Shown here piece after piece: positions 650 through 27,386 of a DNA stretch of 64,000 nt (the first letter of the stretch is position 1; every line of letters starts with the position of its first letter). The translations under genes were made by a program, and so were the position numbers. Location of the stretch: IMG/VR virus record IMGVR_UViG_3300032294_002797, positions 1 to 64,000 of that record; one strand, given 5' to 3'. Under the pieces are notes generated by a model. The model worked only from the letters and a program-made list of their open reading frames with translations. It had not been told where the DNA came from and searched no databases.

Positions 650-685
650 ATAATTTTATTCTAAAACTTAGTTTGAATATTTTTC

Positions 686-697
686 GGTGTAATACTA
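686..697 (+). promoter_or_regulatory. putative late promoter (GGTGTA motif)
   Basis: Same motif precedes all four antisense HNH genes and several structural genes. Confidence 0.5.
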
Positions 698-701
698 TAC
701 T

Positions 702-795
702 AGGGTGTGGGTAGACACTCTTATAACAGATCAATTTATGATACTGGACGCCCAAATGATTGTCAACTACCCTTGACTTTTGTTTGGGTTGTCTT
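702..795 (+). ncRNA. structured RNA leader, kissing-loop motif copy 1
   Basis: Hairpin 702-721 (loop GGGTAG) and hairpin 746-795 (loop CTACCC); loops are complementary; homologous covarying copy at 10603. Confidence 0.7.
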
Positions 796-810
796 GTTTA
801 TATAGATAAA

Positions 811-1536
811 ATGAAAACAAAAATTTGTGGATCATGTAAAGTTGAGAAATCTATTGAAAGATTTTGTAAAGATAGTAGAAAAAAATCTGGATTATGTAGT
901 CAGTGTAAAGATTGTCGAAAAAAATATAATGATAACAATAAAGAAAAAAGACAAAAATATTATGAAGAAAACAAAGAACTAATATCTTTAAAAAATAAAA
1001 TATATAGATGTTCTAATAAAGAAAAATTAGATAAATACTATCAAAAACATAAAAAAAGACACAATGAATATTCTAAACGATGGTATCATTCTCATAAAGA
1101 ATCACAATCAAAATACAATAAAGAATGGAGAGAAAAAAACAAAGATAGACATCATGCAAATTATATAAAATGGAAAAATAAAAACCAAAAATATTTAAAA
1201 AAATATAGAAGAAAAAGAAGAAAACAGCCAACAGTTAAATTGATAGATAATGTAAGAAGAAGAATCAATAGTATGATTAAAAATAAGAGTAAACATTCAA
1301 TAGATTATTTAGGTATAGATATAAAATCATATAAGAAATATTTAGAAAATTTATTCCAAAAAGGTATGACTTGGAAAAATTATGGAGTTAAAGGATGGCA
1401 TATCGACCACATTATCCCACTATCTTCTGCAAAAAATGAAAAAGAATTGATTAAATTATTCCACTATTCAAATACTAGGCCTTTGTGGGCTAAAGATAAT
1501 CTAATTAAATCAAATCGTCATCCTCATACTTTTTAA
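811..1536 (+). CDS. HNH/endonuclease VII-like homing endonuclease with N-terminal Zn finger
   Basis: CxxC...CxxC N-terminus, Lys/Arg-rich linker, WHIDHIIPL...FHYSNTRPLWAKDN His-Me motif; antisense to neighbours. Confidence 0.85.
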   Translation: MKTKICGSCKVEKSIERFCKDSRKKSGLCSQCKDCRKKYNDNNKEKRQKYYEENKELISLKNKIYRCSNKEKLDKYYQKHKKRHNEYSKRWYHSHKESQSKYNKEWREKNKDRHHANYIKWKNKNQKYLKKYRRKRRKQPTVKLIDNVRRRINSMIKNKSKHSIDYLGIDIKSYKKYLENLFQKGMTWKNYGVKGWHIDHIIPLSSAKNEKELIKLFHYSNTRPLWAKDNLIKSNRHPHTF

Positions 1537-1813
1537 TAAGCCAACCTAATTTCATTAAATCAAACCGTACTTCATCGGTAACTTTCCCCTCGCAGCCACA
1601 TGCATACCAATCCATATAATCTCCTTTTTTTATAAGATCAGATATAATTCCACCGGCATATCGCCATGAGCAAGTCCATTCTTTATCATTGTAAAAAAAT
1701 CTATTATTACACAAAGAACAGTATAGGTCTTTACAATATCTAAATGAGTTTATACATTTATCTTGTATCTCTTTGCTATTAATCAAATCTTTTTCTAAGT
1801 CTGGTTGATTCAT
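1505..1813 (-). CDS. hypothetical protein
   Basis: ORF in leftward run; 3' end overlaps the HNH gene convergently. Confidence 0.7.
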   Translation of the reverse strand: MNQPDLEKDLINSKEIQDKCINSFRYCKDLYCSLCNNRFFYNDKEWTCSWRYAGGIISDLIKKGDYMDWYACGCEGKVTDEVRFDLMKLGWLIKKYEDDDLI

Positions 1814-9852: not shown

Positions 9853-10332
9853 AATCCATATCCTTTAAGAATATTTGTAACATAATTTTGTGTTTTAATA
9901 ATATCTATGGCTCTGATAGCATCTTCTAAAGATATAAATTCATATGGCATATCGGGCAAAACTATAGGGACGCCATTTTGTAAGACAACAAATTTATTGT
10001 CTTGTTTAGTAATAGATAGATTCATTTCTTTTCCTCTATTTTAGATTTTACCCACTCAAACCATTGATCTGGAGTAAAATTATAGTATCCTTATAATCTT
10101 GAACACAAGAGATAGCATAAGCAATATCTTCAGCCAGTGTTGGTTTAGTCATTATTTTCTTGCAACACTCCATTCAAATATTTAGCCAAATTCTCCACAT
10201 CATCTTCAGTCCAAACATATTCATGACCATTAGCATTACCATGCTCAATATCAAGTTGGTAACTTTCCAGAGAGTCAAGAATTAGGCCAATTTCATGCTT
10301 ATCAAGATTAATGTTCATTACTTTTCTCCATA

Positions 10333-10512
10333 ATATTGACCATGATGTACCAACTGCACCCGTCCCTACAATTTATTCCACTAAAAGAGGGCCGCTTTAA
10401 TAATAGGATATTTGGAACTATTATTTCACGATTCGGTCTGGTTTAGTCTCCCGTAGGTAAGTATATGACTTATCATCATGGAAAGTCCCATGCGACTCAT
10501 CATAGTCAATAT
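10333..10512 (-). ncRNA. candidate structured RNA (~180 nt)
   Basis: 15-bp closing helix (one G-U on minus strand) with internal hairpins, just downstream of promoter 10532-10559; no ORF of 60 aa or more. Confidence 0.5.
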
Positions 10513-10531
10513 CTAGTTTTGGTCTGACGGC

Positions 10532-10559
10532 AGTTTACCATAACATCGGCACTTGTCAA
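10532..10559 (-). promoter_or_regulatory. sigma70-type early promoter
   Basis: TTGACA-agtgCCGATgttatgg-TAAACT. Confidence 0.7.
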
Positions 10560-10602
10560 CACCAACCTTTAGAAAATATGCCAATATGGTGTATTTATTA
10601 GA

Positions 10603-10699
10603 GTTGAGAGTGTGGTCAGACATTTTCAATACTACAATATAATATCTATCAAACGCCCAGATAATTGTCAACTGACCTTGACGTTATTTGGGCTGTTTG
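10603..10699 (+). ncRNA. structured RNA leader, kissing-loop motif copy 2
   Basis: Hairpin 10603-10630 (loop GGTCAG) and hairpin 10650-10699 (loop CTGACC); complementary loops with compensatory change versus copy 1. Confidence 0.7.
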
Positions 10700-10715
10700 T
10701 TTTAATGGGTCAATT

Positions 10716-11429
10716 ATGACAAATAAAACTTGTAGTAAATGTAACAAAGAGTTTCCAGCAACAAACAAATACTTTCATAAAAATAAAGACCATAAAGATG
10801 GATTAAGAACATGGTGTAAGATTTGTGTTAAAACTTACCAAAATGACCACAAAAAAATTCGTAAATGTTTAGTTTGTCAAGATGACCTAGAACTATATTC
10901 CAAAAAACGATGCAAAAAATGTCAACAAAATTATACTAAACAATGTAGTAAAGAAAGAGATAAATCGGTTAAACGAAAACAGCAAAGTAAATTAAGAACA
11001 AAGAAATTTCATGAAAATAATCCAAATAAATTAAGTGAATATAATAAAAAATATAGAGAAAGATATAATAAATGGAAAAATAGTAAATATAAAAATGATC
11101 TCAATTTTAAATTGCAAAAAGCATTAAGAGACAGACTTTATCATGCTCTGGCTTCTAATATCAAATCTCAACACACAATGGAACTATTAGGATGCTCTAC
11201 AGAACAATTAAAGGTTCATATAGAGTCACAATTTAAAGATGGTATGAGTTGGGATAATTGGTCTATTAAAGGGTGGCATATTGACCATATTCGCCCATGT
11301 TCTTCGTTCGATCTTTCTGATCCTGTTCAACAAAAACAGTGCTTTCATTACTCTAATCTTCAACCATTATGGGCTAGTGAAAACCTAAAAAAGAATAATA
11401 AATGGGTTTCAGACCCAATAGTATTTTGA
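10716..11429 (+). CDS. HNH/endonuclease VII-like homing endonuclease
   Basis: Zn-finger N-terminus; GWHIDHIRPC...FHYSNLQPLWASEN; paralog of 811..1536. Confidence 0.85.
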   Translation: MTNKTCSKCNKEFPATNKYFHKNKDHKDGLRTWCKICVKTYQNDHKKIRKCLVCQDDLELYSKKRCKKCQQNYTKQCSKERDKSVKRKQQSKLRTKKFHENNPNKLSEYNKKYRERYNKWKNSKYKNDLNFKLQKALRDRLYHALASNIKSQHTMELLGCSTEQLKVHIESQFKDGMSWDNWSIKGWHIDHIRPCSSFDLSDPVQQKQCFHYSNLQPLWASENLKKNNKWVSDPIVF

Positions 11430-11465
11430 TTCTTTGATTTTGATGGGATTTAATCCCGATTTCAT

Positions 11466-11633
11466 TCAATTAATGGTTTGATTATACTTTTTAATAGGAA
11501 CAATAGCCCTTAGACGATTATGAATAATGGTCAAATTATTACGGTCAATGCTAACTTTATCGTTCAAAGTTTGACTAATAACAGACTTCAACAGGGCTAT
11601 TTCTTTATCGGTCAATAAAACATTTCTATACAT
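11466..11633 (-). CDS. hypothetical protein
   Basis: Start moved to MYRNVL, downstream of a TTGACA-17-TATAGT promoter at 11680-11708. Confidence 0.55.
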   Translation of the reverse strand: MYRNVLLTDKEIALLKSVISQTLNDKVSIDRNNLTIIHNRLRAIVPIKKYNQTIN

Positions 11634-16828: not shown

Positions 16829-16884
16829 TCCACACACCTATCCATTATATCGGCACTGTGGCGTTTTGTCTATAACTTTTTTGA

Positions 16885-16966
16885 CGTAACCCGTTGTGGC
16901 ACTTAAACTTACGACAAAATTTCGGGGCCCGATTTGCCCTAAGTCCTTTGATACCAAGCACTTACG
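16885..16966. repeat. 82-bp double-palindrome element (family A) copy 1
   Basis: 29+24+29 bp architecture. Confidence 0.9.
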
Positions 16967-16984
16967 TCAAATGATGTTGAATCA

Positions 16985-17031
16985 AAAGAGAAAGCCGCAG
17001 CCGGTTTCCCAGCCACGGCTCTCCCCCTTTT
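16985..17031 (-). terminator. intrinsic terminator
   Basis: Long GC-rich hairpin with GAAA-type loop and T-rich tail after the DUF932 gene. Confidence 0.7.
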
Positions 17032-17049
17032 CATCGTGACACGAAAAGA

Positions 17050-17997
17050 TCAGACGGCGTTCGCAAACTCCACTGCGGTATTGAGTGCCTTGAGATTATC
17101 AACTCCGTTCTGGCCGAACCAGAGAGAGTCAAGGCGATTGCTCACATTGCGACCCTTAGTATAATTCAGGTATTCATTGTAGCCGTTATAAGCAGCCCAC
17201 CATGTACCCCGAACCCCCGTTGCACTCTGCTTCGGGCCTTCAACAAGGGCGAGAATCTCGTCCATGATATTGCGGGTACGGGTTTTGATATCCTCGTCGG
17301 GAGTCTTATCAATACCCAGCACCACCTTCACATAACGCTTGATATCTGCTTGATTGAAGTCCTTACTGGCGAGGAACCGATACTGTTCCGCAGTAGCCTC
17401 AAACTGAGCATTGATATTGTCCATAATATCACGCACGTTTTCCAGATTGGTCTTGCTGGAACGAGTGTGACGAATACGAATCAACTGGCTATCCTTACTG
17501 GAGTGAGCAGCCGCAAGCGTATTCACGCACACGACGCGAATCGGAGTATATCCGACGCGAATCGACGTGGTGCCGTCATGGCTGTTCGACAGCAGAATGA
17601 ACTTGCTCACCTCGTCACCGGGAACAATCTCGCTGTTCGAGCGGTTGAGTTGAGCCAGAACCCAAACCTTTTCACCTTCGGAGAGAGAGCCAGCCGTATG
17701 CAACTGGCACTCACCAGCGTCGAGAAACGGCTGGAACCAATCGAAAGCGGCTTGATTCTGGAGCGGCGTATAACGCGGCCCCACAACACCCAGCACGCGA
17801 TTATCATCCTTACGATAGGTAGCCTTGGCATTGACCAATGTACCCTCTGCGGTAAACAAATCCTTTGTGCCAACTTCCCAATCCAGACCAGCAGCGGTAA
17901 TCGCTTCGCCGATAGAGGGATTTTCGTCCAACTGCGTACCCTCACCATGCCAAGGGGTAGCACCAACAAACATCATCTTTTCAACCATAGCAGGCAT
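17050..17997 (-). CDS. DUF932 family phage/plasmid-like protein
   Basis: PWHGEG, AGLDWEV, LGVVGPRYTPLQN, LLSNSHDGT, TPIRVVCVNT and GTWWAAYN motifs. Confidence 0.9.
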   Translation of the reverse strand: MPAMVEKMMFVGATPWHGEGTQLDENPSIGEAITAAGLDWEVGTKDLFTAEGTLVNAKATYRKDDNRVLGVVGPRYTPLQNQAAFDWFQPFLDAGECQLHTAGSLSEGEKVWVLAQLNRSNSEIVPGDEVSKFILLSNSHDGTTSIRVGYTPIRVVCVNTLAAAHSSKDSQLIRIRHTRSSKTNLENVRDIMDNINAQFEATAEQYRFLASKDFNQADIKRYVKVVLGIDKTPDEDIKTRTRNIMDEILALVEGPKQSATGVRGTWWAAYNGYNEYLNYTKGRNVSNRLDSLWFGQNGVDNLKALNTAVEFANAV

Positions 17998-18039
17998 AAT
18001 CAACCCTTTCGTGTTATCGTTCTTCGTTCAACTGTACTG

Positions 18040-18068
18040 ATTCTACACTATAGATATCGGCCTGTCAA
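18040..18068 (-). promoter_or_regulatory. sigma70-type early promoter with CCGATA box
   Basis: TTGACA-ggCCGATAtctatagtg-TAGAAT. Confidence 0.8.
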
Positions 18069-18096
18069 GCAGAAAACTTGCGAAAAAATTTCGTGA

Positions 18097-18178
18097 CGCA
18101 AACCCTTGTCGCACAAGCACTTACGTCAAAATCGGCCCGCCCGATTTGCCCTAAGTCTTTGCTGGGGCAGGATTTAGG
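18097..18178. repeat. 82-bp element copy 2
   Basis: 29+24+29; contains the stop codon of 18151..18657. Confidence 0.9.
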
Positions 18179-18657
18179 AGAGGCACCCGGAAATCCTTCT
18201 CAAACATTTTAACCGTGTCTGAGCGATAAGCACATTCGTCTGGCATATAGCAATAAACACCTACACACTGTGCTTTGGGACAATCTTCATGGATAGTATT
18301 TTTAATATGCCTAATGGTTGAGCCAGAGCAAACTAGATCATCAACAATAATGTATCTGAATGGAGTTACTCCCTCCATAGGAAAATCGCTGTAGCATTTC
18401 TCATCTGGCTTACGAATAAGAACAATATGTTTTTTCAGTAATTCAGCAATTTGTGGAACAACAACAAGTCCACTCACACCACAACAAGCAATACTATCAA
18501 ACTCGTTAGCAATCTTTCTTAGATCACAAACAGCCTTGATAATAACTTTGTTTCTGGCCTGATGATTTAATACCCTGCAAGTGTGGCTAGCACCTTGAAT
18601 AATCTTACCATCTTCGGTGCGTCTAAAGTCTTCAACCATATTATTCATCACATTCAT
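18151..18657 (-). CDS. phosphoribosyltransferase-like protein
   Basis: PRPP-binding motif YIIVDDLVCSGST; IACCGVSG; LIRK. Confidence 0.8.
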   Translation of the reverse strand: MNVMNNMVEDFRRTEDGKIIQGASHTCRVLNHQARNKVIIKAVCDLRKIANEFDSIACCGVSGLVVVPQIAELLKKHIVLIRKPDEKCYSDFPMEGVTPFRYIIVDDLVCSGSTIRHIKNTIHEDCPKAQCVGVYCYMPDECAYRSDTVKMFEKDFRVPLLNPAPAKT

Positions 18658-18748
18658 AAAAACGGACGGTACGATTTGAACGTACTAGAAAGAAAGGAAA
18701 GAAAGAATAGATACTTGTCCCACCAAGTTGCGTCCGTTCAGAAAAGAT

Positions 18749-18943
18749 TCAATCGTCAATTAGTTCGTCTGTGATATTATGATAATAGTTTTCCCAGCCA
18801 GCATTATCCATAGTCTCAGTCTCGTCTTCATCAAGACCAGCCCAAGGCTCATCAGTGCCATCATTATAGTAGCACTCGTCTTCATACAATTCTTCAGAAT
18901 TGTCTAGAATATTATGATAGTCATATTCAAAATCTCTACTCAT
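18749..18943 (-). CDS. acidic hypothetical protein
   Basis: AGGAG RBS; very Asp/Glu-rich. Confidence 0.6.
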   Translation of the reverse strand: MSRDFEYDYHNILDNSEELYEDECYYNDGTDEPWAGLDEDETETMDNAGWENYYHNITDELIDD

Positions 18944-18993
18944 CTCTTTTCTCCTTTGAAAACTATCATACACCAATCAGCCGGTTTGTCAAG

Positions 18994-19066
18994 TGGGGCC
19001 TGTGGGACTCGAACCCACGACCAAAGGTTTAAAAGACCCTTGCTCTACCAACTGAGCTAAAGCCCC
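18994..19066 (-). tRNA. trnK: tRNA-Lys(TTT)
   Basis: Full cloverleaf, anticodon loop CT-TTT-AA, TTCGA T-loop; own promoter. Confidence 0.95.
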
Positions 19067-19106
19067 TACTTTGTATAGTTTATCCTATCGCTTCCATATT
19101 GTCAAG

Positions 19107-19178
19107 TGACCCCAATGAGAATCGAACTCATATTAACAGATTGAAAGTCTGCTTTCCTAACCATTAGAAGATGGGGCC
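19107..19178 (-). tRNA. trnE: tRNA-Glu(TTC)
   Basis: Cloverleaf, loop CT-TTC-AA. Confidence 0.9.
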
Positions 19179-19309
19179 ACTCCCGCAACTCAACGTCAGC
19201 CTCCGTTTTGCTATTGTACATAATCGGTATTCTGTTGTCAAGACTTGAGTTGTTTTTGAATCGAAATGGTGTATAATGACTTAGTGAGTTGTACTACAGG
19301 AGTTCCATT

Positions 19310-19798
19310 ATGAAATGTATTAATTGTAATAAAGATACAGATAACCCTAAATTTTGCTCTAGATCATGCGGAGTGTCTTATAACAACAGAGTAAAACCAA
19401 AAAGAATTAAAAGAATGCAAACATGTATATTTTGTAAAAATCAATTTCATTCTTTACATAGTTATAATCAAAAATATTGTAATAAAAAATGTTTACAAAA
19501 TCATAGAGAGCACAATATCCAAACCAATGGTTTTGGAGAAGGTCATTATCATAATAATTCTATTAGAAAATACCTAATTAAAAAACATGGTAATCATTGT
19601 ATGATCTGTAACCAGTCTGGAGATAATTGGAACGGTAAGCCAATTACTTTAATTGTGGATCATATTGATGGTAAATCTAATAACAATAAACTAGATAACC
19701 TTAGAATTGTTTGTCCTAATTGCGATAGTCAACTACCTACATACAAAGCAAAAAACAAAGGAAATAGCACTCGTAGTTATTTTATAGTCCAAAAGTAA
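19310..19798 (+). CDS. HNH endonuclease inserted in tRNA cluster
   Basis: FCSRSC and YCNKKC Zn motifs; VDHIDGKSNNNKLDNLRIVCPNC; GGTGTA upstream; AGGAG RBS. Confidence 0.9.
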   Translation: MKCINCNKDTDNPKFCSRSCGVSYNNRVKPKRIKRMQTCIFCKNQFHSLHSYNQKYCNKKCLQNHREHNIQTNGFGEGHYHNNSIRKYLIKKHGNHCMICNQSGDNWNGKPITLIVDHIDGKSNNNKLDNLRIVCPNCDSQLPTYKAKNKGNSTRSYFIVQK

Positions 19799-19799
19799 A

Positions 19800-19874
19800 T
19801 AGGGCGTGGAGGAGTCGAACCTTCCCTTTTTTTCACCTTATAAGAGTGACTGCCACTACCGGCGGCAACGCCCC
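19800..19874 (-). tRNA. trnI: atypical tRNA-Ile(TAT)
   Basis: Acceptor GGGGCGT/ACGCCCT, anticodon arm TCACT-CTTATAA-GGTGA, TTCGA; short D-loop and T-stem mismatch. Confidence 0.65.
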
Positions 19875-19924
19875 ATATGAGTATCATACACTATCTATCG
19901 TCAGTTGTCAACCCCAATCTTTAG

Positions 19925-20009
19925 CGGAATCTGAGGGATTCGAACCCCCGGAGGATTTCTCCTCGTCGGTTTAGTAAACCGGTGCATTAGACCACTCTGC
20001 CAAGATTCC
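19925..20009 (-). tRNA. trnS: tRNA-Ser(ACT)
   Basis: Type II cloverleaf with long variable arm, G73, loop TT-ACT-AA. Confidence 0.85.
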
Positions 20010-20012
20010 AAA

Positions 20013-20084
20013 CTGGCGAGACAGGATTCGAACCTGTAACCTAGCGGTTAACAGCCGCTTGCACTACCGTTGTGCTACCCGCCA
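20013..20084 (-). tRNA. trnN: tRNA-Asn(GTT)
   Basis: Cloverleaf, AGCGG-CTGTTAA-CCGCT. Confidence 0.92.
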
Positions 20085-20089
20085 TCAAT

Positions 20090-20161
20090 TTCCGGAGCAT
20101 GGGTACGATCCATGAATAAACGGACCAAAGCCGTTTGTGATACCAGTTTCACCACTCCGGA
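20090..20161 (-). tRNA. trnQ: tRNA-Gln(TTG)
   Basis: Cloverleaf, AACGG-CTTTGGT-CCGTT; atypical T-loop ATCGTAC. Confidence 0.8.
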
Positions 20162-20164
20162 GCA

Positions 20165-20235
20165 AGCCCACAACTAGAATCGAACTAGTATTAGATGATT
20201 ACAAATCAACTGTATTACCATTATACTATGCGGGC
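20165..20235 (-). tRNA. trnT: tRNA-Thr(TGT)
   Basis: Cloverleaf, loop TT-TGT-AA. Confidence 0.85.
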
Positions 20236-20240
20236 GAAGC

Positions 20241-20429
20241 CTACATATCATAGTCCTGACGCCAACCCCTGTCAATATCACGACGGGTACGCTGACGCTT
20301 GGGACGGTTATCAAACAACGTATTACGTTCTTCTCGGTGTCCAGTAGCCAACTCCCACGGTTGCTTGACCTTGACCTTGATCTTATTGTGGTTGCGTTGG
20401 GGTCGAGTATCGTCGTTGAGGTGGTGCAT
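20241..20429 (-). CDS. basic hypothetical protein
   Basis: Arg-rich small ORF; start uncertain. Confidence 0.55.
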   Translation of the reverse strand: MHHLNDDTRPQRNHNKIKVKVKQPWELATGHREERNTLFDNRPKRQRTRRDIDRGWRQDYDM

Positions 20430-20637
20430 AGTCAAACCATTGTCCATTATCGTGTAAATAAAAAACCTTGTCAATATTAGGATCGTACGCCATTAAACAG
20501 TATTGTACCGGATAAACTGGTTTTGTCAACTGTTTTTGTGGAAGTTTAGGAAGTTTAATATCGCCCTTTTGATAGTCTTTTACACCAGTATAGGCTAAAC
20601 CTAATAGTGCAACGATTACCCCAATCCATTGGATCAT
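20383..20637 (-). CDS. membrane-anchored hypothetical protein
   Basis: AGGAGA RBS, N-terminal TM segment; follows promoter 20660-20688. Confidence 0.7.
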   Translation of the reverse strand: MIQWIGVIVALLGLAYTGVKDYQKGDIKLPKLPQKQLTKPVYPVQYCLMAYDPNIDKVFYLHDNGQWFDYAPPQRRYSTPTQPQ

Positions 20638-20659
20638 CAATTCTCCTTTGCGTCTAACT

Positions 20660-20688
20660 AGCATACCATACTTATCGGCAATTGTCAA
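20660..20688 (-). promoter_or_regulatory. sigma70-type early promoter with CCGATA box
   Basis: TTGACA-attgCCGATAagtatgg-TATGCT. Confidence 0.8.
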
Positions 20689-20705
20689 GCGACTCTTTAG
20701 TTTTT

Positions 20706-20787
20706 CCTAAGTACTTGAGACATAAGCACTTACGTCAAATTTTCGCCGCCCCGTTCGTCCTAAGTGGTTACCCACAAAGGACTTAGG
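20706..20787. repeat. 82-bp element copy 3
   Basis: 29+24+29. Confidence 0.9.
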
Positions 20788-20794
20788 AAGAGTT

Positions 20795-21031
20795 TTATTC
20801 TTCTTCCAGGCTCCAACCGGCTTTTCTTACCACCTTAGTAGTTTTATATACTTTAGTATCTGGTAATGCAGTAGCGTAGTCTTTGAATCCTCTTTCATCA
20901 AGATAAAAATGTTCGTCGAGCGTGTCAAATTTATTAGTCTCCCATAATGCTGCTACAGCAGCGTCCAGAGGTTTTTGATTAGTAGAGTAAATAAGTTGTA
21001 GTGTGCCAGATTGTATATAATACTTAGCCAC
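20795..21031 (-). CDS. hypothetical protein
   Basis: GTG start with GGAGG RBS, overlapping the upstream stop. Confidence 0.65.
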   Translation of the reverse strand: MAKYYIQSGTLQLIYSTNQKPLDAAVAALWETNKFDTLDEHFYLDERGFKDYATALPDTKVYKTTKVVRKAGWSLEEE

Positions 21032-21623
21032 TATACCCTCCACCACATTTGTAGCATGAGCAATATTCATATTCGTCCCCGCCCGTTCCTTCGGCCCAAC
21101 AAGGTTCCTCATACTCACCAATATCACCAAGGCTTTCACGACCAACATCTACAATAACCAATACTTTATGCTTACCTCTTTTTACATATCCAAGATTAGC
21201 ATTATGAGCATCTGTATAGGTTATCCCAAACATTTCTTCAATATCAACTATCATTCTGTTGATAACTTCGAAATTTTCGCACAGGTCATTCTCATAACAG
21301 TAGCCATCGCATTGCCTACACTTGAGCGGTGAAGCAATTTCGGTCAAGTATCCCCACTCGCTCAGTACCAATTTTTCCTCGGCTTTATAACCACCCTTGC
21401 CGTCTGATACTGCAAAATAGTTAGGAATCCGTATTCTGCAAACTGGACTATAAACACGCGGAGTAAAAGTACACGGTTCAGATAGTTCGCTCTGTATATG
21501 ATGAGCAAACTCGGCTAAACTTTTATTAGGAAAACTTTTGAATCCGTATCGGCTACCTTTCATTTTATAGAAAGAGTTTTTGCTTCCCCCATCGGCATAT
21601 TTACCAATATATTTAGTAGTCAT
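21024..21623 (-). CDS. protein kinase-like fold protein
   Basis: Gly loop DGGSK, beta3 Lys (GFKSF), catalytic DAHNAN, DFG-like DVG. Confidence 0.65.
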   Translation of the reverse strand: MTTKYIGKYADGGSKNSFYKMKGSRYGFKSFPNKSLAEFAHHIQSELSEPCTFTPRVYSPVCRIRIPNYFAVSDGKGGYKAEEKLVLSEWGYLTEIASPLKCRQCDGYCYENDLCENFEVINRMIVDIEEMFGITYTDAHNANLGYVKRGKHKVLVIVDVGRESLGDIGEYEEPCWAEGTGGDEYEYCSCYKCGGGYSG

Positions 21624-21632
21624 TACATTCTC

Positions 21633-22343
21633 CTAATGAGAGGGAAACAAAACATTAGCCAGACCACGAACACAAAGATCACAGTGTACGCTATTTTTGC
21701 TTTTTGTACAAGTCACAACGCCACGACCACGACGGATTTCCGGGCAAGTGATAAACTTCTCACCCTCTAATACAACGAGTTTAGGCAACGCTTCTCTCCA
21801 TGCGGCGGCTTTAGCCTTGCCGCGAGGACGCTTGGGAGCGATTTTAGTATCACTATCGCACCATGCGAAAAGTTTGAAACCAGCCGCTTTCGCTTGTTTC
21901 ATATCTTCACCGTCGTGGATACTAGCATACATATTTATATACTTGCCAAGTTGAGTAGACAATTTAGTATCATAAATATGGGTATAAGCCCACATAGTCG
22001 GCAGACTACCGCCACTGGCAAGAATACTCTCACAAGCCCACAATACATTATCTACATACTCATGGTCGAGTTCGCCATACTTGAAAAAGTCTCCACGCTC
22101 ATGCCAGCGAACATCTTTATTTTTCTTGACAGCATCCACAAGCATGGCACGGATACGATTTTTTTCCGTGATAAGATTTTGCATACCGGCAGGACGCACA
22201 CCGGGATAGATATTTTCCAAGTCCTCGGCATAGCATCCGTTCCCGAGAAAATCACAATCGCTAGGGCAAGTATCGCCAACGGGGCGACTCACTACGATGC
22301 AATTTTCTTTGCCCAACTTGTCATTACCATTTGCTGTTTTCAT
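21633..22343 (-). CDS. Gp88-like Cys-rich (putative Fe-S) phage protein
   Basis: TCPSDC...GCYA, VRWHERGDF, WAYTH and C-terminal CP...C...CxxC. Confidence 0.7.
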   Translation of the reverse strand: MKTANGNDKLGKENCIVVSRPVGDTCPSDCDFLGNGCYAEDLENIYPGVRPAGMQNLITEKNRIRAMLVDAVKKNKDVRWHERGDFFKYGELDHEYVDNVLWACESILASGGSLPTMWAYTHIYDTKLSTQLGKYINMYASIHDGEDMKQAKAAGFKLFAWCDSDTKIAPKRPRGKAKAAAWREALPKLVVLEGEKFITCPEIRRGRGVVTCTKSKNSVHCDLCVRGLANVLFPSH

Positions 22344-22364
22344 ATTCTTTCTCCTGTGCTACTG

Positions 22365-22393
22365 ATTCTACATTAGAGTATCGGCAGTGTCAA
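22365..22393 (-). promoter_or_regulatory. sigma70-type early promoter with CCGATA box
   Basis: TTGACA-ctgCCGATActctaatg-TAGAAT. Confidence 0.8.
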
Positions 22394-22421
22394 GAGAAAA
22401 ACTTTGGCAAAAATATTTTGA

Positions 22422-22503
22422 TGCAAGTCCTTGCTGCATCAGCAGTTACGTCAAAATCGGCCCCGCGAATTCGCCCTAAGTCTTTATGCTGCAACAACTT
22501 AGC
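22422..22503. repeat. 82-bp element copy 4
   Basis: 29+24+29; abuts the tRNA-Asp 3' end. Confidence 0.9.
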
Positions 22504-22576
22504 GAGAGCGACGGGACTTGAACCCGCAACCTCCAGCGTGACAGGCTGGCGATCTAACCAATTGATCTACGCTCCC
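22503..22576 (-). tRNA. trnD: tRNA-Asp(GTC)
   Basis: Cloverleaf, CCAGC-CTGTCAC-GCTGG. Confidence 0.95.
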
Positions 22577-22579
22577 AAA

Positions 22580-22651
22580 TAGCCCCAAGAGGAATCGAAC
22601 CTCTAACCAGTGCTTAGAAGGCACTTGTTATATCCATTTAACTATAGGGCC
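22580..22651 (-). tRNA. trnR: tRNA-Arg(TCT)
   Basis: Cloverleaf, AGTGC-CTTCTAA-GCACT. Confidence 0.92.
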
Positions 22652-22717
22652 ATAATACCGATAGCCGCCAGTTATTCACCAGCGGCATCTCGGTTTATTA
22701 TAGCATATCGTAGATGC

Positions 22718-22966
22718 TTAGGCAACAGCCTCGGCTTCCACCTTGGCATTGTGAGCGTCACCGGCCTGCTCGGCAGTAACACCCGTGACGCGGGCACGCC
22801 ACACCTTATAACCCTGCTCGCTGAAACTCTTGATTTCGCCAGCCTTGACATTAGCATGAACATCACCAGGCAGCGAACCACTCAGACACTCACGAATCGA
22901 ATCCACAACCGAGTCACGATCAAGTTCATCGGCAACAATATCAACCGCAAACGCAAACTTCTTCAT
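22718..22966 (-). CDS. hypothetical protein
   Basis: GGAGA RBS; GC-rich codon usage; tandem promoters at 23011-23039 and 23099-23127. Confidence 0.75.
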   Translation of the reverse strand: MKKFAFAVDIVADELDRDSVVDSIRECLSGSLPGDVHANVKAGEIKSFSEQGYKVWRARVTGVTAEQAGDAHNAKVEAEAVA

Positions 22967-23098
22967 GTTACATTCTCCAAAAGTGTTACAGTTCCAATCG
23001 TCATAGTATCAGTATACGCTACAGATACTTACTTGTCAAGAGTGCCATGAGGGTTTCTATTGTTGGCTTCGTGGCAGCGTCTTGCGTCGTACTCTATC

Positions 23099-23127
23099 AT
23101 TCTACAGTATAGTATCGGCATTGTCAA
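23099..23127 (-). promoter_or_regulatory. sigma70-type early promoter with CCGATA box
   Basis: TTGACA-atgCCGATActatactg-TAGAAT. Confidence 0.8.
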
Positions 23128-23165
23128 CCCAGCACTTGAGTTAGCCTCAAAAAATTTTTAGTCTT

Positions 23166-23247
23166 CCTAAGTCGTTGAGTATCAAGCACTTACGTCGAAT
23201 TTTCGCGGCCCGCCTCGCCCTAAGTTCTTTAGGGACAAGGCTTTAGG
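23166..23247. repeat. 82-bp element copy 5
   Basis: 29+24+29; abuts the stop at 23248; contains an exact IHF consensus TATCAAGCACTTA. Confidence 0.9.
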
Positions 23248-23619
23248 TTACGAGAGATAACCCTCACAACCCAAACCCGCAAGATCACGCAGCAGATTTT
23301 CCGCCGCTTCGGGAGTCTTGAGCGTGATGCTCTGCTTGGTGTTTGTAGCAGCAGGATACCACCTATCGCCCTTCCAACCACCCACCAGAAAATCCGTCCA
23401 CTCCTTACTTTCCTTCAGACCCCAGCCGGTGTGGAGTCGAATAGCCTTGATGCAAGGAATCCGGTTGTCAAGACTCATACCGCCCGTGATAGTAACGGTC
23501 TTGAGTTGATTCACGCCCAACGCAACCTCAAAAGCATTCACGATCCTGTCGTAAATGTCACGGTTGCAATTGTTGGACAGTTCAAAAGCCTCACGGACGC
23601 TCAGTTGCAGATTAATCAT
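23248..23619 (-). CDS. ribosomal protein bL12 (L7/L12) C-terminal-like domain protein
   Basis: RIPCIKAIRLHTGWGLKESKEW resembles KIxVIKxVRxxTGLGLKEAK. Confidence 0.7.
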   Translation of the reverse strand: MINLQLSVREAFELSNNCNRDIYDRIVNAFEVALGVNQLKTVTITGGMSLDNRIPCIKAIRLHTGWGLKESKEWTDFLVGGWKGDRWYPAATNTKQSITLKTPEAAENLLRDLAGLGCEGYLS

Positions 23620-24098
23620 ATTCCAAAACTTTCTGTATATTTAGGTTCAATCTCGTAAATGCCGTCAAAATTTCCGTTTCGTTCTTCTAGGACATATACC
23701 TGTTTACCATCAGTAATCAAGGTATCGTATTCACTATTGTCCCAAATGAACTCATTGTTATCACTTTCTCGTCGCCAGTGTGGATCACGAAGCGGATTAT
23801 AATACAACTTTTCCAGATTGTCAACAGGTAAAGAGGGATAAAAATCCTTACGCAACATAAACTCATTACATCTAACCCATCCACTCACATCATGCACACC
23901 AGCCTCAAATACCTGTTTAGCCTTATTCGGCCTATTCCACAACTTACAACCCCGCATCTCCAATTGATATTCAGACGGATCAAAATAGCAAACCTCCACG
24001 GTTTTGCCACCTTGCTTAATTTTCAGTTGCCAAAACATATAGTTAGGCCCGTTACTCAAATGAAAGCGAACTTCGCCGTATGGTGGTCTAGGTTTCAT
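23616..24098 (-). CDS. hypothetical phage protein
   Basis: 160-aa ORF; ATG only about 6 nt below a TAGAAT -10, so probably leaderless. Confidence 0.75.
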   Translation of the reverse strand: MKPRPPYGEVRFHLSNGPNYMFWQLKIKQGGKTVEVCYFDPSEYQLEMRGCKLWNRPNKAKQVFEAGVHDVSGWVRCNEFMLRKDFYPSLPVDNLEKLYYNPLRDPHWRRESDNNEFIWDNSEYDTLITDGKQVYVLEERNGNFDGIYEIEPKYTESFGI

Positions 24099-24145
24099 AT
24101 CGACATTCTACCTTAAAAACTTTAATTGTCAAGTACACCTTAGTC

Positions 24146-24192
24146 TGGCTGACTATCAGCAACGGCAGCAAATCCGTAGGATTAGGCAAGAC
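24146..24192. repeat. dispersed repeat family B copy 4
   Basis: GCTGACTA-N14-AAATCCGTAGGATTA-N5-GAC. Confidence 0.85.
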
Positions 24193-24279
24193 AAGCAGAT
24201 TGGGTTATGCCATACTCGGCCTTACATTTAACCGTGGCTTCTTTGATATCATTCTGCCAGCGGCCCTCATCTACTTATC
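24190..24279 (-). ncRNA. candidate small RNA (~90 nt)
   Basis: Own promoter 24287-24315; 11-bp closing helix with two G-U pairs on minus strand; no ORF. Confidence 0.5.
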
Positions 24280-24333
24280 GTGTTCTAGTATACCTCTATT
24301 ATCGGATATTGTCAAGGTTAGTCTTTAAAAAAT

Positions 24334-24415
24334 CCTAAGTGCTTGTCCCATAAGAAGTTACGACAAATTTTAGCCGCCGAATTTGCCCTAAGTCCTTATC
24401 CTACAATGAGTTACC
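24334..24415. repeat. 82-bp element copy 6
   Basis: 29+24+29. Confidence 0.9.
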
Positions 24416-24515
24416 GATATACCACCAATGGCATTGTTGGCAAAATATCCAGATTATACCATTTTTGTCATATTTCCAACACAATTCGTCACAAGCCCCA
24501 CACGGGCAAATATCA

Positions 24516-24689
24516 CTAAGAGTTTTCATATACAAACTTTATATATCTATCTACAAGTTCTGATACAGCAATCTCATGAGTACTGATTAGTTCTTTTACT
24601 TGGCTTACATTATGCTTATTTACAGCAGCCATCTTATTTCTGAAAAAACTCAGAATAAGAATCATAGCCTTATCACGATCATTAACCAT
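24516..24689 (-). CDS. hypothetical protein
   Basis: Start moved to MVNDRDK, overlapping the upstream stop. Confidence 0.55.
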   Translation of the reverse strand: MVNDRDKAMILILSFFRNKMAAVNKHNVSQVKELISTHEIAVSELVDRYIKFVYENS

Positions 24690-24939
24690 GTGGATAATCC
24701 TTTGGGTAATCAGTCTCTGGACGTTGTGGCTTGGGTTGTCCCTCGTATGGCATCCACCACGGAGCATCCATACGATCTACTATACCGGGACTTTCTTCAC
24801 AAATCAAGATATGTTCACTCACAGGATCGTCCCAATGAATCTCATATCTTCCCTGCCACACACCAATATACTCGCCAAAATAGTAAACTTTCTGACCATT
24901 AATAGGGCGACGAGGACCGAAAAAACTAATCCATTCCAT
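24682..24939 (-). CDS. hypothetical protein
   Basis: MEWIS...P...WWMP pattern common in small phage proteins. Confidence 0.7.
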   Translation of the reverse strand: MEWISFFGPRRPINGQKVYYFGEYIGVWQGRYEIHWDDPVSEHILICEESPGIVDRMDAPWWMPYEGQPKPQRPETDYPKDYPHG

Positions 24940-25133
24940 TAAGATTTTACCTTATGATTAAAAGCCGTATCATATGCTTCCTCTGCCTCTTCGATTTTTT
25001 TCAACACGCTATTTTGCATCTTCTGAAACTGGGCTTTATTGCCCCAGTAATAACCTTCTTCAATATGGTCATGGACAAGGCTCAAGAGATAATCAAGTTC
25101 AGTCTTAGTAAATTCAATAGTTTCGGTTTTCAT
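24939..25133 (-). CDS. hypothetical protein
   Basis: TAATG coupling. Confidence 0.65.
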   Translation of the reverse strand: MKTETIEFTKTELDYLLSLVHDHIEEGYYWGNKAQFQKMQNSVLKKIEEAEEAYDTAFNHKVKS

Positions 25134-25366
25134 TACCAATTCTCCGGCATAGAAATCTCATCAAAACCAATATAGCATATCACTAACGAATTGTCAAACT
25201 GATCCCATTCCAAAGCACCATCATCATATTCTCCATGCCACCAATCACCCCAACCACCTTCTTCTTGATTCCAAGTAAGATCAATAGGAGACGAATATCC
25301 CTTCACGCAACAAAGATATTTCTGATTCACAATAGGATCACCATAATGCCAGTTCATTATTTCCAC
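25133..25366 (-). CDS. hypothetical protein
   Basis: Packed ORF. Confidence 0.65.
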   Translation of the reverse strand: MEIMNWHYGDPIVNQKYLCCVKGYSSPIDLTWNQEEGGWGDWWHGEYDDGALEWDQFDNSLVICYIGFDEISMPENW

Positions 25367-25518
25367 CTAAAACTAAAGTGAGTAGCCTCGTTATCACAAA
25401 TAAACGTAAAATATGCCAGAAAGAACATAGTCAAAGATGGGAAAAATAAAATGATTTTACGAAAGATTCTCATCATGTTTCCTTTTCCACCATTATACCA
25501 TTCTTTATCGTCAAGTCA

Positions 25519-26040
25519 AGTACCGACACACTGATAGTTTTACGAATAACACTCGGTACTATGTTAGTTCAACCTCAAGGTTTTACCTTATCTAAGGAAA
25601 CTATCAGCAGATTTATAACCAGCGAATCTTTTACGCCCCGATTCTATAATCCATATTAGCCTAAATACTCTAGTGCGAATATCTTCGGGAATATGGAAAC
25701 CGTCCACGGAACTCCTCCCTAGAATCGAGTTAAACTTCCGGAATGTTTTTCGATTCATCTGGCTCTTGGAAACGGTTACTGGTATATTTTATATGGCAGA
25801 GTTTTTAGCCTATCACAAAGGATGGGAAGGGCGAACTCTTTTAATCCTAACCTATTATCTAGGAACCATAATATTGTTTATGGGTGTCACCTATTTCTAC
25901 TCATGCTATCGCATTTTCGGAGGCCACATGGAAGGATCGTCACCGGTAACTCCTCTTCGCTCTGTTGTGCTTTGCCTCGTCATACGGAAAACCGTCACCC
26001 ATAAAGTATTGGTCGTGGTGAGGACGCTATCCCCCATAGA
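25519..26040 (-). ncRNA. candidate large structured ncRNA (~520 nt)
   Basis: Own promoter 26049-26076; no minus-strand ORF of 60 aa or more; several 7-10 bp perfect helices and a 3' pseudoknot. Confidence 0.6.
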
Positions 26041-26076
26041 TTGGTATTACTATACAGCATATAACCTTGCTGTCAA

Positions 26077-26260
26077 CCCCGGCGATGATTACGTCTTCGC
26101 TGAACGGGAGGTTTATCGTAATAGGTTATCCAATCTAGTCCCTGAGCATGGACCCACGAAAGTTTGTCATAGTACGCTAGGTTTAGTGCTGCTTCTCTAT
26201 CCTAGCACGGCTTAGTATGATGTTATCTCTGGCACTCAACCGCTATGATTTGTTTTGTCT
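26077..26260 (-). ncRNA. candidate structured RNA (~185 nt)
   Basis: Own promoter 26270-26297; multi-stem junction; no ORF of 60 aa or more. Confidence 0.45.
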
Positions 26261-26326
26261 TACTCAGTCATTCTACAATATATTATCGACTTGTCAAGAG
26301 GGTTTCTTGAAAAAATATTTTTTTGA

Positions 26327-26408
26327 TGTAAGGTGTTGGAGGATAAAGACTTACGACAAATCCGGCGGCGCAAATTCGCCCTAAGTCCCCTTGGGCAAAG
26401 AACTTAGA
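26327..26408. repeat. 82-bp element copy 7
   Basis: 29+24+29. Confidence 0.9.
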
Positions 26409-26419
26409 GCGAACCGCGT

Positions 26420-26902: not shown

Positions 26903-26912
26903 CTTTTTTCCT

Positions 26913-27071
26913 TTATTCTATTTCCAAAATCTCATAGACCCCAATCTTAGGATCCATACAATGTTCATCATATTCTTTTTCTTGACGAACCCACTCCCTA
27001 GCATCCTCTATATCGTCAAAATCATAGTTTCTACTTGACCCATTTTCAGTTCTAATCACACGATAGACCAT
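26913..27071 (-). CDS. hypothetical protein
   Basis: Start moved to MVYRVI (GAGG RBS, promoter 27094-27122). Confidence 0.6.
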   Translation of the reverse strand: MVYRVIRTENGSSRNYDFDDIEDAREWVRQEKEYDEHCMDPKIGVYEILEIE

Positions 27072-27135
27072 ACAGACCTCTCTTTCTGCACCAATCATAT
27101 CATAATACAGACTATTTGTCAAGAGCCCATTATTT

Positions 27136-27182
27136 TGGCTGACTATCGCCCATAACCGCAAATCCGTAGGATTAGGAGGGAC
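27136..27182. repeat. dispersed repeat family B copy 5
   Basis: Consensus match; contains the stop of 27172..27333. Confidence 0.85.
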
Positions 27183-27333: not shown

Positions 27334-27386
27334 AGAGTTATTGTACCGTATTATCGGCAAGAGTCAAGAGCAAACTTTAGATTATT

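What the first reader, a model, noticed from the sequence alone, without database searches (positions are those of the whole stretch)
10588..11429. Second leader copy shows a compensatory double change in the loop-loop pairing
Seen: loop 1 is GGTCAG (10614-10619) and loop 2 is CTGACC (10672-10677), versus GGGTAG/CTACCC in copy 1. Two adjacent positions changed in both loops and the 6-bp pairing is kept. The stems also differ while staying paired, using G-U pairs valid on the + strand, and the GTGT/ACA, GCCCA/TGGG and GTCAA/TTGAC boxes are retained. This is direct evidence of selection on an RNA tertiary contact. The whole promoter-RNA-ORF unit is antisense and back-to-back with an early promoter, as expected of a self-contained mobile module.
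Basis: seen in the sequence. Interest (0 to 1): 0.8.

Follow-up and report, generated by a model that had tools for sequence, protein, structure and literature searches.

The report
Kissing-loop leader of phage HNH cassettes
Two selfish nuclease genes in this lake-water giant phage are each preceded by a folded RNA leader whose two hairpin loops pair with each other; this pairing is kept through at least twelve different loop sequences in related phages, so it is a real, apparently undescribed regulatory RNA.

Summary
It holds far beyond the two copies: 37 distinct leaders from viral and metagenome contigs carry 12 different loop pairs, and every pair is perfectly Watson-Crick complementary. 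No family member lacks the pairing. Both stems covary and use G-U 171 times against 14 A-C, so the + strand is the folded strand. The fold is a hairpin at the likely 5' end (H1), a 19-32 nt linker, and a long hairpin (H2, about -17 kcal/mol) followed by a U-rich tail, with the ribosome site just beyond.

My best reading is a cis-acting leader that limits expression of an HNH-like homing endonuclease, with H2 acting as a terminator-like attenuator docked by H1. That mechanism is inferred, not shown.

New points:
- The opposite strand of the linker and H2 encodes a near-consensus outward sigma-70 promoter in most members.
- The roughly 195-nt promoter-leader block is 98-100% identical between contigs whose nuclease proteins are only 42-47% identical.
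- The copy-1 cassette is absent from a close relative, so it is an insertion.

There is no Rfam match and no paper was found. It is a new variant of known structure-based control of homing endonuclease genes.

The parts
10532..10559 (-). Phage-type sigma-70-like promoter (TTGACA-16-TAAACT, spacer with GCCGAT) back-to-back with the copy-2 cassette. It belongs to the conserved ~195-nt block.
   Evidence: (repeat families D13, D18)
10588..10597 (+). Copy 2: conserved GGTG box plus -10-like hexamer TATTTA, the probable promoter of the nuclease transcript. The predicted start is about 10603-10605, at the base of hairpin 1.
   Evidence: GGTGTA is the most conserved motif of the family. The same box directly precedes RBS and ATG in leaderless cassettes L006 and L478/L480/L492 and two other genes in the window. 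The transcription start is inferred.
10603..10630 (+). Copy 2 hairpin 1 (H1): stem 10603-10613 with 10620-10630, loop GGTCAG 10614-10619
10631..10649 (+). Copy 2 linker. On the - strand it holds a degenerate -10 (TAGATA, 10648-10643).
10650..10699 (+). Copy 2 hairpin 2 (H2): basal stem 10650-10654 with 10695-10699, outer stem 10655-10665 with 10683-10693, inner stem GTCAA 10667-10671 with TTGAC 10678-10682, loop CTGACC 10672-10677. The - strand of 10666-10671 reads TTGACA (-35).
10694..10715 (+). Copy 2 U-rich tail (8 of 12 U) and weak ribosome site (GGG 10707-10709) before the ATG
10716..11429 (+). Copy 2 ORF, 237 aa: N-terminal CxxC zinc-ribbon-like motifs, helical middle region, C-terminal His-Me/HNH-like motif (WHIDHI...N...N)
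11403..11417 (.). Terminator-like hairpin readable on both strands, inside the 3' end of ORF 2
673..1540 (+). Copy 1 cassette as bounded by comparison with relative L403, which lacks it
686..695 (+). Copy 1 GGTG box plus -10-like TAATAC
702..721 (+). Copy 1 H1: stem 702-708 with 715-721, loop GGGTAG 709-714
738..766 (-). Copy 1 outward promoter on the - strand: -35 TTGACA 766-761, 17 nt spacer, -10 TATCAT 743-738. It faces the 81-aa gene at 649-404.
746..794 (+). Copy 1 H2: basal stem GGAC/GTCT, outer stem from 750, inner stem 762-766 with 773-777, loop CTACCC 767-772
811..1536 (+). Copy 1 ORF, 241 aa, 34% identical to ORF 2

Best explanation
The region is the 5' leader RNA of a free-standing homing-endonuclease cassette that encodes an HNH-like (His-Me finger) nuclease.

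Shown:
- The + strand RNA folds into H1, a linker and the long hairpin H2.
- The whole 6-8 nt loop of H1 pairs with the whole loop of H2, an intramolecular kissing-loop helix.

Inferred:
- Transcription starts about 7 nt after a conserved GGTG-TAtnnt box, so H1 sits at the very 5' end.
- H2 has a G+C-rich base, about -17 kcal/mol and a U-rich tail, with the ribosome site immediately downstream. It acts as a terminator-like attenuator or bulky roadblock that keeps nuclease output low.
- The H1-H2 docking locks this compact fold and sets how much transcript or translation gets through. It also gives the message a protected 5' end.

The same DNA read on the other strand is an outward-facing sigma-70 promoter: -35 in the 5' half of the H2 inner stem, -10 in the linker. 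It restarts transcription of the phage gene that the insertion cut off from its upstream transcription. The promoter-leader block behaves as a portable regulatory unit shared by divergent nuclease genes.
For: Structure:
- Twelve loop pairs are all Watson-Crick complementary.
- 35 of 35 sites found by a signature that ignores the loops carry the complement. The 79 non-complementary hits of the metagenome pattern were all unrelated sequence.
- Pair counts: 95.8% of cells paired against 84.9% in shuffles and about 40% when the partner is slid. 22 pairs change on both sides. The kissing helix is 98.1% paired.
- G-U cells number 171 against 14 A-C.
- RNAalifold finds H1 and H2 on its own.

Terminator-like H2:
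- Mean -17.4 kcal/mol, and 8.2 of the next 12 nt are U against a 36% background. This holds in all 37 leaders, including the two most diverged, which have U6-U7 runs.

Promoter box:
- The GGTG-TAtnnt box is shared with leaderless cassettes and with other genes in the window.

Outward promoter:
- TTGACA, 17 nt, TGn, TATAAT, with a perfect -10 in 16 of 35 members.

Insertion:
-.

Precedent:
- RNA structures that limit homing-endonuclease expression, a stable hairpin just upstream of an unsequestered RBS (seg43(25)), and promoters for host genes embedded in endonuclease cassettes are all described in PMC2988022.
Against: - No transcript ends could be mapped. The only RNA libraries holding the region are stored as contigs, and coverage of the leader is nil or very low.
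- The simple terminator scan did not flag H2.
- Part of the U-rich tail pairs with the A-rich 5' flank, with covariation. The tail is therefore not a free U-tract in the final fold.
- Nothing shows what the kissing contact changes. It could raise or lower read-through, or act only on stability or translation.
- Leaderless cassettes of the same nuclease family exist, so the leader is not required for the gene.
Confidence: 0.5

Rival explanations
1. Antisense insulation or antisense control. The outward - strand promoter makes an mRNA whose 5' end is antisense to H1. The H2 loop has exactly the sequence of that antisense loop. It would either shield H1 from pairing with the - transcript, or compete with it so that - strand promoter activity tunes nuclease expression. 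The second case resembles IS10 RNA-IN/RNA-OUT or pT181-type attenuation.
For: - Face-to-face promoters whose transcripts are predicted to overlap by about 40 nt at their 5' ends.
- The loop-loop helix is strictly Watson-Crick with no G-U, although G-U makes up about 15% of stem pairs. That fits a need for identity to the antisense sequence.
- Two cassettes in one genome always carry different loop pairs: this window, and L282.
Against: - L027 and L025 keep H1, H2 and perfect 7-8 nt loop pairing but have no internal - strand promoter.
- The copy-2 subgroup, including the finding itself, has a degenerate -10.
- Four G-U pairs in copy 2's H1 become A-C mismatches on the - strand, so the - strand hairpin is poorly formed there.
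Confidence: 0.15
2. Protein-recognition platform. The stacked H1-kiss-H2 helix is bound or cut by a protein. Candidates are the nuclease itself (autoregulation) or host RNase III. That event would control message stability or translation.
For: - H2 has about 21 base pairs, and H1 could stack on it through the kissing helix, giving a long double-stranded substrate.
- Autoregulation is known for I-TevI, though there it acts on DNA (PMC2988022).
- The nuclease has zinc-ribbon-like and basic helical regions.
Against: - The same leader (98-100% identical) serves nuclease proteins only 42-47% identical. Loop sequences also change freely, which argues against sequence-specific recognition by the encoded protein.
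Confidence: 0.12
3. DNA-level inverted repeat. The two loop sequences would be half-sites of an operator, or the ends of a small invertible segment that carries the - strand promoter, rather than RNA partners.
For: - Complementarity is strictly Watson-Crick.
- The two repeats bracket the whole - strand promoter.
Against: - Each repeat sits exactly in the loop of a stem that covaries with a strong + strand G-U bias of 171 to 14. A double-stranded DNA site would not require this.
- Loops vary while the encoded proteins do not track them.
- All 35 family members have the same orientation. No strand-switching joint is listed among the laid DNA contigs.
- A segment of 52-58 bp is very short for an invertase.
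Confidence: 0.05
4. A ligand-sensing riboswitch in which two hairpins dock by their loops ahead of a terminator, as in purine riboswitches.
For: The layout of two hairpins, a loop-loop contact and a terminator-like tail resembles purine and lysine riboswitch features (own knowledge).
Against: - There is no closing helix or three-way junction.
- The conserved unpaired bases in the linker are explained by the - strand promoter, and they vanish in L027 and L025.
- There is no Rfam match, even at E up to 10.
- A homing endonuclease gene gives no metabolic logic for ligand sensing.
Confidence: 0.04

Closest known systems
RNA-structure control of T4-family homing endonuclease genes (I-TevI, segB, mobE; seg43(25) of Aeromonas phage 25), as reviewed in PMC2988022
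   Same: - A selfish nuclease gene with its own promoter and a stable RNA structure just upstream that limits expression.
- In seg43(25) the hairpin ends immediately before an unsequestered RBS, as H2 does here.
- Cassettes that displace host promoters carry replacement promoters for downstream genes.
   Different: - Those elements are single hairpins that usually sequester the RBS.
- None is described with a second hairpin docked by a covarying loop-loop helix.
- There the replacement promoters lie in the coding region, not in the leader hairpin.
Kissing-loop complexes of antisense control systems (ColE1 RNA I/RNA II, R1 CopA/CopT, pT181) and the IS10 pIN/pOUT arrangement (own knowledge)
   Same: - Fully Watson-Crick pairing of whole 6-7 nt hairpin loops.
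- Face-to-face promoters with 5'-overlapping transcripts in a mobile element.
- An outward promoter.
- A terminator hairpin in the leader (pT181).
   Different: - Here the two loops lie in the same RNA molecule.
- The contact persists where no internal antisense promoter exists.
PeSL composite promoter/terminator cassettes of T4-like phages (PMC2839356, PMC4122927)
   Same: A short, highly conserved block of promoter plus stem-loop, flanked by unrelated sequence. It looks like a point of genetic exchange.
   Different: - PeSLs are a single early promoter plus a stem-loop found between many kinds of ORF.
- This block has divergent promoters and a two-hairpin kissing leader, and it was found only in front of one nuclease family.
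HEARO / IscB omega RNA (Rfam RF02033; own knowledge)
   Same: A structured RNA directly upstream of an HNH-domain ORF in a mobile element.
   Different: - No sequence or structure match.
- The protein here is about 240 aa, and no domain other than the His-Me-like motif was found.
- Nothing suggests a guide segment.
Purine and lysine riboswitch loop-loop contacts (own knowledge)
   Same: Intramolecular loop-loop docking of two hairpins in a 5' leader ahead of a terminator-like hairpin.
   Different: - No junction and no conserved ligand core.
- Loop sequences drift freely as long as they stay complementary.

Membership tests
Intramolecular kissing-loop RNA | Two hairpin loops whose complementarity is kept through compensatory changes | tested here: met
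   12 loop pairs, all perfectly complementary. 4 of 7 loop-loop pairs change on both sides and 98.1% of cells are paired. 0 of 42 cross-type combinations pair.
Intramolecular kissing-loop RNA | Flanking stems form on the transcribed strand | tested here: met
   G-U 171 against A-C 14 cells. RNAalifold consensus, with 18 of 27 pairs showing double changes. Physical pairing in RNA is not testable here.
Intrinsic terminator / leader attenuator | Stable hairpin with a G+C-rich base followed by a U-rich tract | tested here: met
   Mean -17.4 kcal/mol and 8.2 of 12 U in all 37 leaders. The simple scanner did not call it.
Intrinsic terminator / leader attenuator | Transcripts actually end there | not testable with these tools
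   Only contigs of two metatranscriptomes were available, and they do not cover the leader.
Free-standing HNH (His-Me finger) homing endonuclease | beta-beta-alpha-metal catalytic motif | tested here: inconclusive
   - PHROG 1035 'endonuclease VII', E = 3e-18.
- Invariant W187, D190, H191, N214 and N223, nearly invariant H188.
- The model shows strand-strand-helix at residues 187-226.
- The best PDB fold hits are Cas9 HNH domains and ColE7, but with E of 0.37 or worse.
- No Pfam HNH hit even at E up to 10.
Free-standing HNH (His-Me finger) homing endonuclease | Presence/absence polymorphism at an intergenic site between related genomes | tested here: met
   L403 lacks window positions 673 to about 1540, and its flanking genes overlap by ATGA. 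33 of 45 relatives lack a nuclease gene at the copy-2 site.
Free-standing HNH (His-Me finger) homing endonuclease | Site-specific cleavage of the allele that lacks the gene | not testable with these tools
   Needs purified protein or co-infection experiments.
Any Rfam 15 family (including HEARO, riboswitches, ribozymes) | Covariance-model match | tested here: not met
   No hit at gathering score on the whole window. No meaningful hit at E up to 10 on copy 2 or at E up to 1 on three other members.
Purine-type riboswitch | Three-way junction closed by P1, with a conserved ligand-binding core | tested here: not met
   No closing helix. Linker conservation disappears in L027 and L025.
PeSL-like mobile regulatory cassette | Short conserved promoter plus stem-loop block flanked by unrelated sequence | tested here: met
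   An island of about 195 nt at 90-100% identity lies between flanks that do not align. This was seen in two independent contig pairs.
Antisense-RNA control (IS10 pIN/pOUT type) | Face-to-face promoters giving 5'-overlapping transcripts | tested here: inconclusive
   A consensus - strand promoter is present in most members. It is degenerate in the copy-2 group and absent in L027 and L025. No transcript data exist.

The most novel reading that the evidence does not exclude
The leader is a new class of self-docking regulatory RNA built into a bidirectional promoter block of a selfish gene. The loop pair would work as an address that keeps each cassette's H1 bound to its own H2. That would prevent cross-talk with the antisense host-gene transcript and with sister cassettes in the same genome. 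The ~195-nt block would spread by recombination as a portable 'harmless insertion' kit: it limits the nuclease and restarts host-gene transcription.
Probability: 0.15. Interest if true: 0.8.

Novelty: new variant of a known kind. Interest (0 to 1): 0.62.

Why it matters
- Structure-based control of homing endonuclease genes is known, but a leader held together by a freely covarying whole-loop kissing helix is not in Rfam or in the searched literature.
- The family offers a natural series of twelve orthogonal loop pairs on one scaffold. That is useful for studying kissing-loop energetics and for RNA design.
- It shows how a selfish gene can pack three things into about 130 nt on two strands: an RNA fold, its own promoter, and a replacement promoter for the host gene it displaces.
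- The sharp identity island around the leader suggests that regulatory blocks, not only genes, are units of exchange in lake-water giant phages.

Tried and rejected
- **Closing helix.** I considered a helix between GGUGUA and the UAUACC of the linker. I dropped it because the GGTG box is a promoter element. It is shared with leaderless cassettes and with unrelated genes.
- **H2 loop pairing with the ribosome site.** GGGUCA is present only in the copy-2 subgroup, so this is not general.
- **Second + strand promoter from the TTGAC of H2.** The -10 candidates are poor.
- **Generic scan for hairpin pairs with complementary 6-mers.** The background was high and the scan was uninformative until whole-loop complementarity and position were required.
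- **Mapping transcript ends from public RNA runs.** Only contigs are held and they miss the leader.
- **Other collections.** The GenBank phage search found no relative of the leader. All 57 hits in the bacterial and archaeal genome scan were chance matches.
- **Second-generation covariance model.** It found no further diverged leaders among 80 nuclease loci.
- **Fold search of the nuclease model.** It gave only weak hits.

Full report
**Source and setting.** The window is the first 64 kb of a 223,302-bp viral contig, IMGVR_UViG_3300032294_002797. Runs that hold it come from lake and freshwater metagenomes. No GenBank phage is close to it. Genes around the finding run on the - strand. Two ORFs run on the + strand: 811-1536 (241 aa) and 10716-11429 (237 aa). 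They are 34% identical to each other.

**The observation.** Every coordinate in the finding is right.
- Copy 2 has hairpin H1 (stem 10603-10613 with 10620-10630, loop GGTCAG 10614-10619). It also has hairpin H2 (inner stem GTCAA/TTGAC, loop CTGACC 10672-10677, outer stem GCCCAGATAAT/GTTATTTGGGC, basal stem CAAAC/GTTTG).
- Copy 1 has the same layout, with GGGTAG 709-714 and CTACCC 767-772.
- Two adjacent loop-loop pairs differ between the copies and both are compensated.
- The + strand folds much better than shuffled sequence (z = -3.5 and -5.8) and better than the - strand.

**Is it more than two paralogues?** Yes.
- A first covariance model built from nine close copies carried no information on loop-loop pairing. 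It found diverged leaders upstream of nuclease homologues with new loops: AUUGCGG/CCGCAAU (L003), GUACGAG/CUCGUAC (L027, where the inner stem also changed to GGUUG/CAAC) and GGUUGCAG/CUGCAACC (L025).
- Pattern scans of viral and metagenome contigs added GAGCAG/CUGCUC, AUUGCAG/CUGCAAU, GUUGCAG/CUGCAAC, AUUAGGG/CCCUAAU, GGACGG/CCGUCC, GGACAG/CUGUCC and GUGAGG/CCUCAC.
- In all there are 37 distinct leaders and 12 loop pairs, every one perfectly Watson-Crick.
- The result is not produced by my filter. The metagenome pattern did not require complementarity. All 25 hits that look like the family had it, and the 79 that did not were plainly unrelated sequence.
- A signature using only the H2 flanks found 35 family sites, all with the upstream complement, plus two unrelated sequences.
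- Loops of one type never pair with loops of another type (0 of 42 combinations).

**Formal pair counts on the 37-sequence alignment.**
- 95.8% of cells are paired, against 84.9% in column shuffles (0 of 500 shuffles reach the observed value).
- Only 37-45% are paired when partners are slid by 1-3 columns.
- 22 of 36 pairs show changes on both sides.
- The loop-loop helix is 98.1% paired, with double changes at 4 of 7 positions and no G-U.
- RNAalifold predicts H1 and H2 on its own, with 18 of 27 pairs showing compensatory change.

**Which strand folds?** In the stems, G-U or U-G occurs in 171 cells and A-C or C-A in only 14. A structure read from the - strand, or a double-stranded palindrome, would show no such bias. 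The + strand is therefore the folded strand. This is the mRNA strand of the nuclease gene.

**What else is in the leader?**

1. *H2 is terminator-like.* It averages -17.4 kcal/mol and has a G+C-rich base. 8.2 of the following 12 nt are U, against a 36% background. This holds in all 37 leaders, including L027 (GUUUUUUAUU) and L025 (U7). The ribosome site follows within 8-12 nt, for example AGGUGA in many members. Part of the U-rich tail pairs with an A-rich 5' flank, and it does so with covariation: C-G against A-U at one position, and G-C, A-U or G-U at another. The final fold is therefore a helix of about 21 bp.

2. *The opposite strand carries a promoter.* The - strand of the linker and the 5' half of H2 is a near-consensus sigma-70 promoter: TTGACA, 17 nt, TGn, TATAAT.
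   - The -35 is invariant among the 35 GTCAA-type leaders. The -10 is a perfect TATAAT in 16 of them, and a TG extension is present in 25.
   - This explains why the GTCAA/TTGAC inner stem and the linker bases are conserved while the other stems drift.
   - The promoter faces the neighbouring - strand gene. That gene's start codon often lies only 9-25 nt beyond the cassette edge, and the neighbouring genes are unrelated to one another.
   - In the copy-2 subgroup the -10 has decayed (TAGATA, TAGTTA). Those cassettes sit next to a separate phage-type - strand promoter (10559-10532 in the window).
   - L027 and L025 have no internal promoter and likewise sit next to a phage-type promoter. They still keep H1, H2 and the kissing pair, so the RNA fold has a function of its own.

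3. *The most conserved motif is GGTGTA, 9-11 nt before H1*. The TA begins a -10-like hexamer (TATTAT, TATAAT, TATTTA and others). The same TTTTGGTG-TATAAT box directly precedes the RBS and ATG in leaderless cassettes of the same nuclease family (L006, L478, L480, L492). It also precedes two other genes of this window (18974 on the - strand and 19268 on the + strand). I therefore read it as the promoter of the nuclease transcript. With a start 7 nt after the hexamer, H1 is the 5'-terminal hairpin. This start site is inferred.

**Mobility.**
- A relative, L403, has a neighbouring 81-aa gene that is 93% identical. In L403 this gene directly follows the upstream gene with an ATGA overlap. In the window, about 870 bp (673 to about 1540) lie between them, and the upstream gene has a new C-terminus. 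The cassette is therefore an insertion between two co-transcribed genes. This is exactly where an outward promoter is useful.
- At the copy-2 site, 33 of 45 relatives of the adjacent 80-aa gene have no nuclease gene. Twelve have one, of varied sequence and with or without a leader. An RNA-library contig also joins 10146 to 11509 across 230 other letters.

**The leader is more conserved than the gene it serves.** Leaders that are 98-100% identical precede nuclease proteins only 42-47% identical. Sliding-window DNA identity between two independent contig pairs shows a sharp island of about 195 nt at 90-100% identity. The island runs from the phage-type promoter through the leader to the first few codons. 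On both sides the sequence does not align. This is the pattern described for PeSL promoter/stem-loop cassettes of T4-like phages (PMC4122927). One relative (L479, the same contig as L107) keeps an intact leader (126 bits) before a nuclease gene split over three frames.

**The protein.**
- There is no Pfam hit, even at E up to 10.
- PHROG 1035 'endonuclease VII' matches at E = 3e-18.
- At least 7,930 relatives exist, nearly all unnamed.
- Invariant C6, C9, C66, C69, W187, D190, H191, N214 and N223, with H188 nearly invariant, fit a zinc-ribbon plus His-Me finger nuclease.
- The AlphaFold model (pLDDT 85.7) has a strand-strand-helix element at residues 187-226.
- Its best PDB matches are Cas9 HNH domains and ColE7, but they are weak (E of 0.37 or worse).
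- I call it HNH-like. Membership is not proven.

**Mechanism.**
- *Shown:* a + strand RNA fold with a whole-loop kissing contact under selection, terminator-like features of H2, and promoter consensus sequences on both strands.
- *Inferred:* the leader keeps nuclease output low, with H2 as attenuator or roadblock and H1 docking as the lock and 5' protector. The outward promoter compensates for the insertion.

This fits what is known of homing endonuclease genes in T4-like phages. There, stable RNA structures restrict expression. One case, seg43(25), has a hairpin ending just before a free RBS. Cassettes also carry promoters for displaced host genes (PMC2988022). What the kissing contact changes (termination, decay or translation) remains open.

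The strict Watson-Crick nature of the loop helix and the overlapping antisense promoter keep an antisense-shielding model alive. The leaders without an internal promoter argue that this cannot be the whole story. DNA-level repeats, a riboswitch and recognition by the encoded protein are each disfavoured for the reasons given under the rival explanations.

**Known or new?** There is no Rfam family. No paper turned up in three targeted full-text searches. There is no instance in 185,579 bacterial and archaeal genomes or in GenBank phages. The kind, structure-based control of a homing endonuclease gene, is known. This architecture is not.

Noticed in passing
window 10331-10516 (- strand): A freshwater metatranscriptome run (X20) holds a 216-nt contig at depth 746, 100% identical to the window. 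It maps as 10422 down to 10331 and then 10516 down to 10393. That is a circular permutation of a 186-nt unit (216 = 186 + 30). The unit lies just downstream of the - strand promoter at 10559-10532 and has no ORF. Its two ends pair in a 16-bp stem in the predicted fold, and it has no Rfam match. About 100 nt of it recur at 95% identity in another phage contig (L489). It may be an abundant circular or tandemly copied small RNA.
   Followed up: partly
window 16880-35625: There are 14-15 copies of a 58-98 nt repeat (TAAGT...TTACGTCAAATTTT...GCCCTAAGT...). There are also at least ten sigma-70-like - strand promoters with a shared GCCGATA spacer motif (repeat families D1-D4, D13-D16). Together they resemble the PeSL promoter/stem-loop cassettes of T4-like phages.
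   Followed up: no
window 12594-32836: A second repeat family with 6-8 copies: GCTGACTA...CAAATCCGTAGGATTAGG..GACA (families D5, D9, D10, D12). Its function is unknown.
   Followed up: no
window 19268-19798 (+ strand): A third + strand nuclease gene of a different, classical HNH type (169 aa, motif DHIDG...N...CPNC) sits among the - strand tRNA genes. It is preceded by the same ATGGTGTATAAT box but has no kissing-loop leader.
   Followed up: partly
window 18993-22652 (- strand): Nine tRNA genes: Lys, Glu, Ile, Ser, Asn, Gln, Thr, Asp and Arg.
   Followed up: no
window 919-1134: ORF 1 contains three tandem 78-nt (26-aa) lysine-rich repeats, with weaker copies in ORF 2 (11001-11084). They fall in the helical middle region, which varies most between relatives.
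   Followed up: no
L479 2742-3542 (same contig as L107): An intact leader (126 bits, loops complementary) precedes a nuclease gene whose remnants lie in three different frames, with residues 23-97 missing. It is a decaying gene with a preserved leader.
   Followed up: partly
L478, L480, L492, L496, L502 (upstream of their nuclease ORFs): These are leaderless cassettes. The GGTG-TATTCT box of the nuclease gene overlaps, base for base, the -10 (TAGAAT) of a divergent phage-type promoter on the other strand. A GATTTTGTGGGTTT motif is repeated twice just upstream.
   Followed up: no
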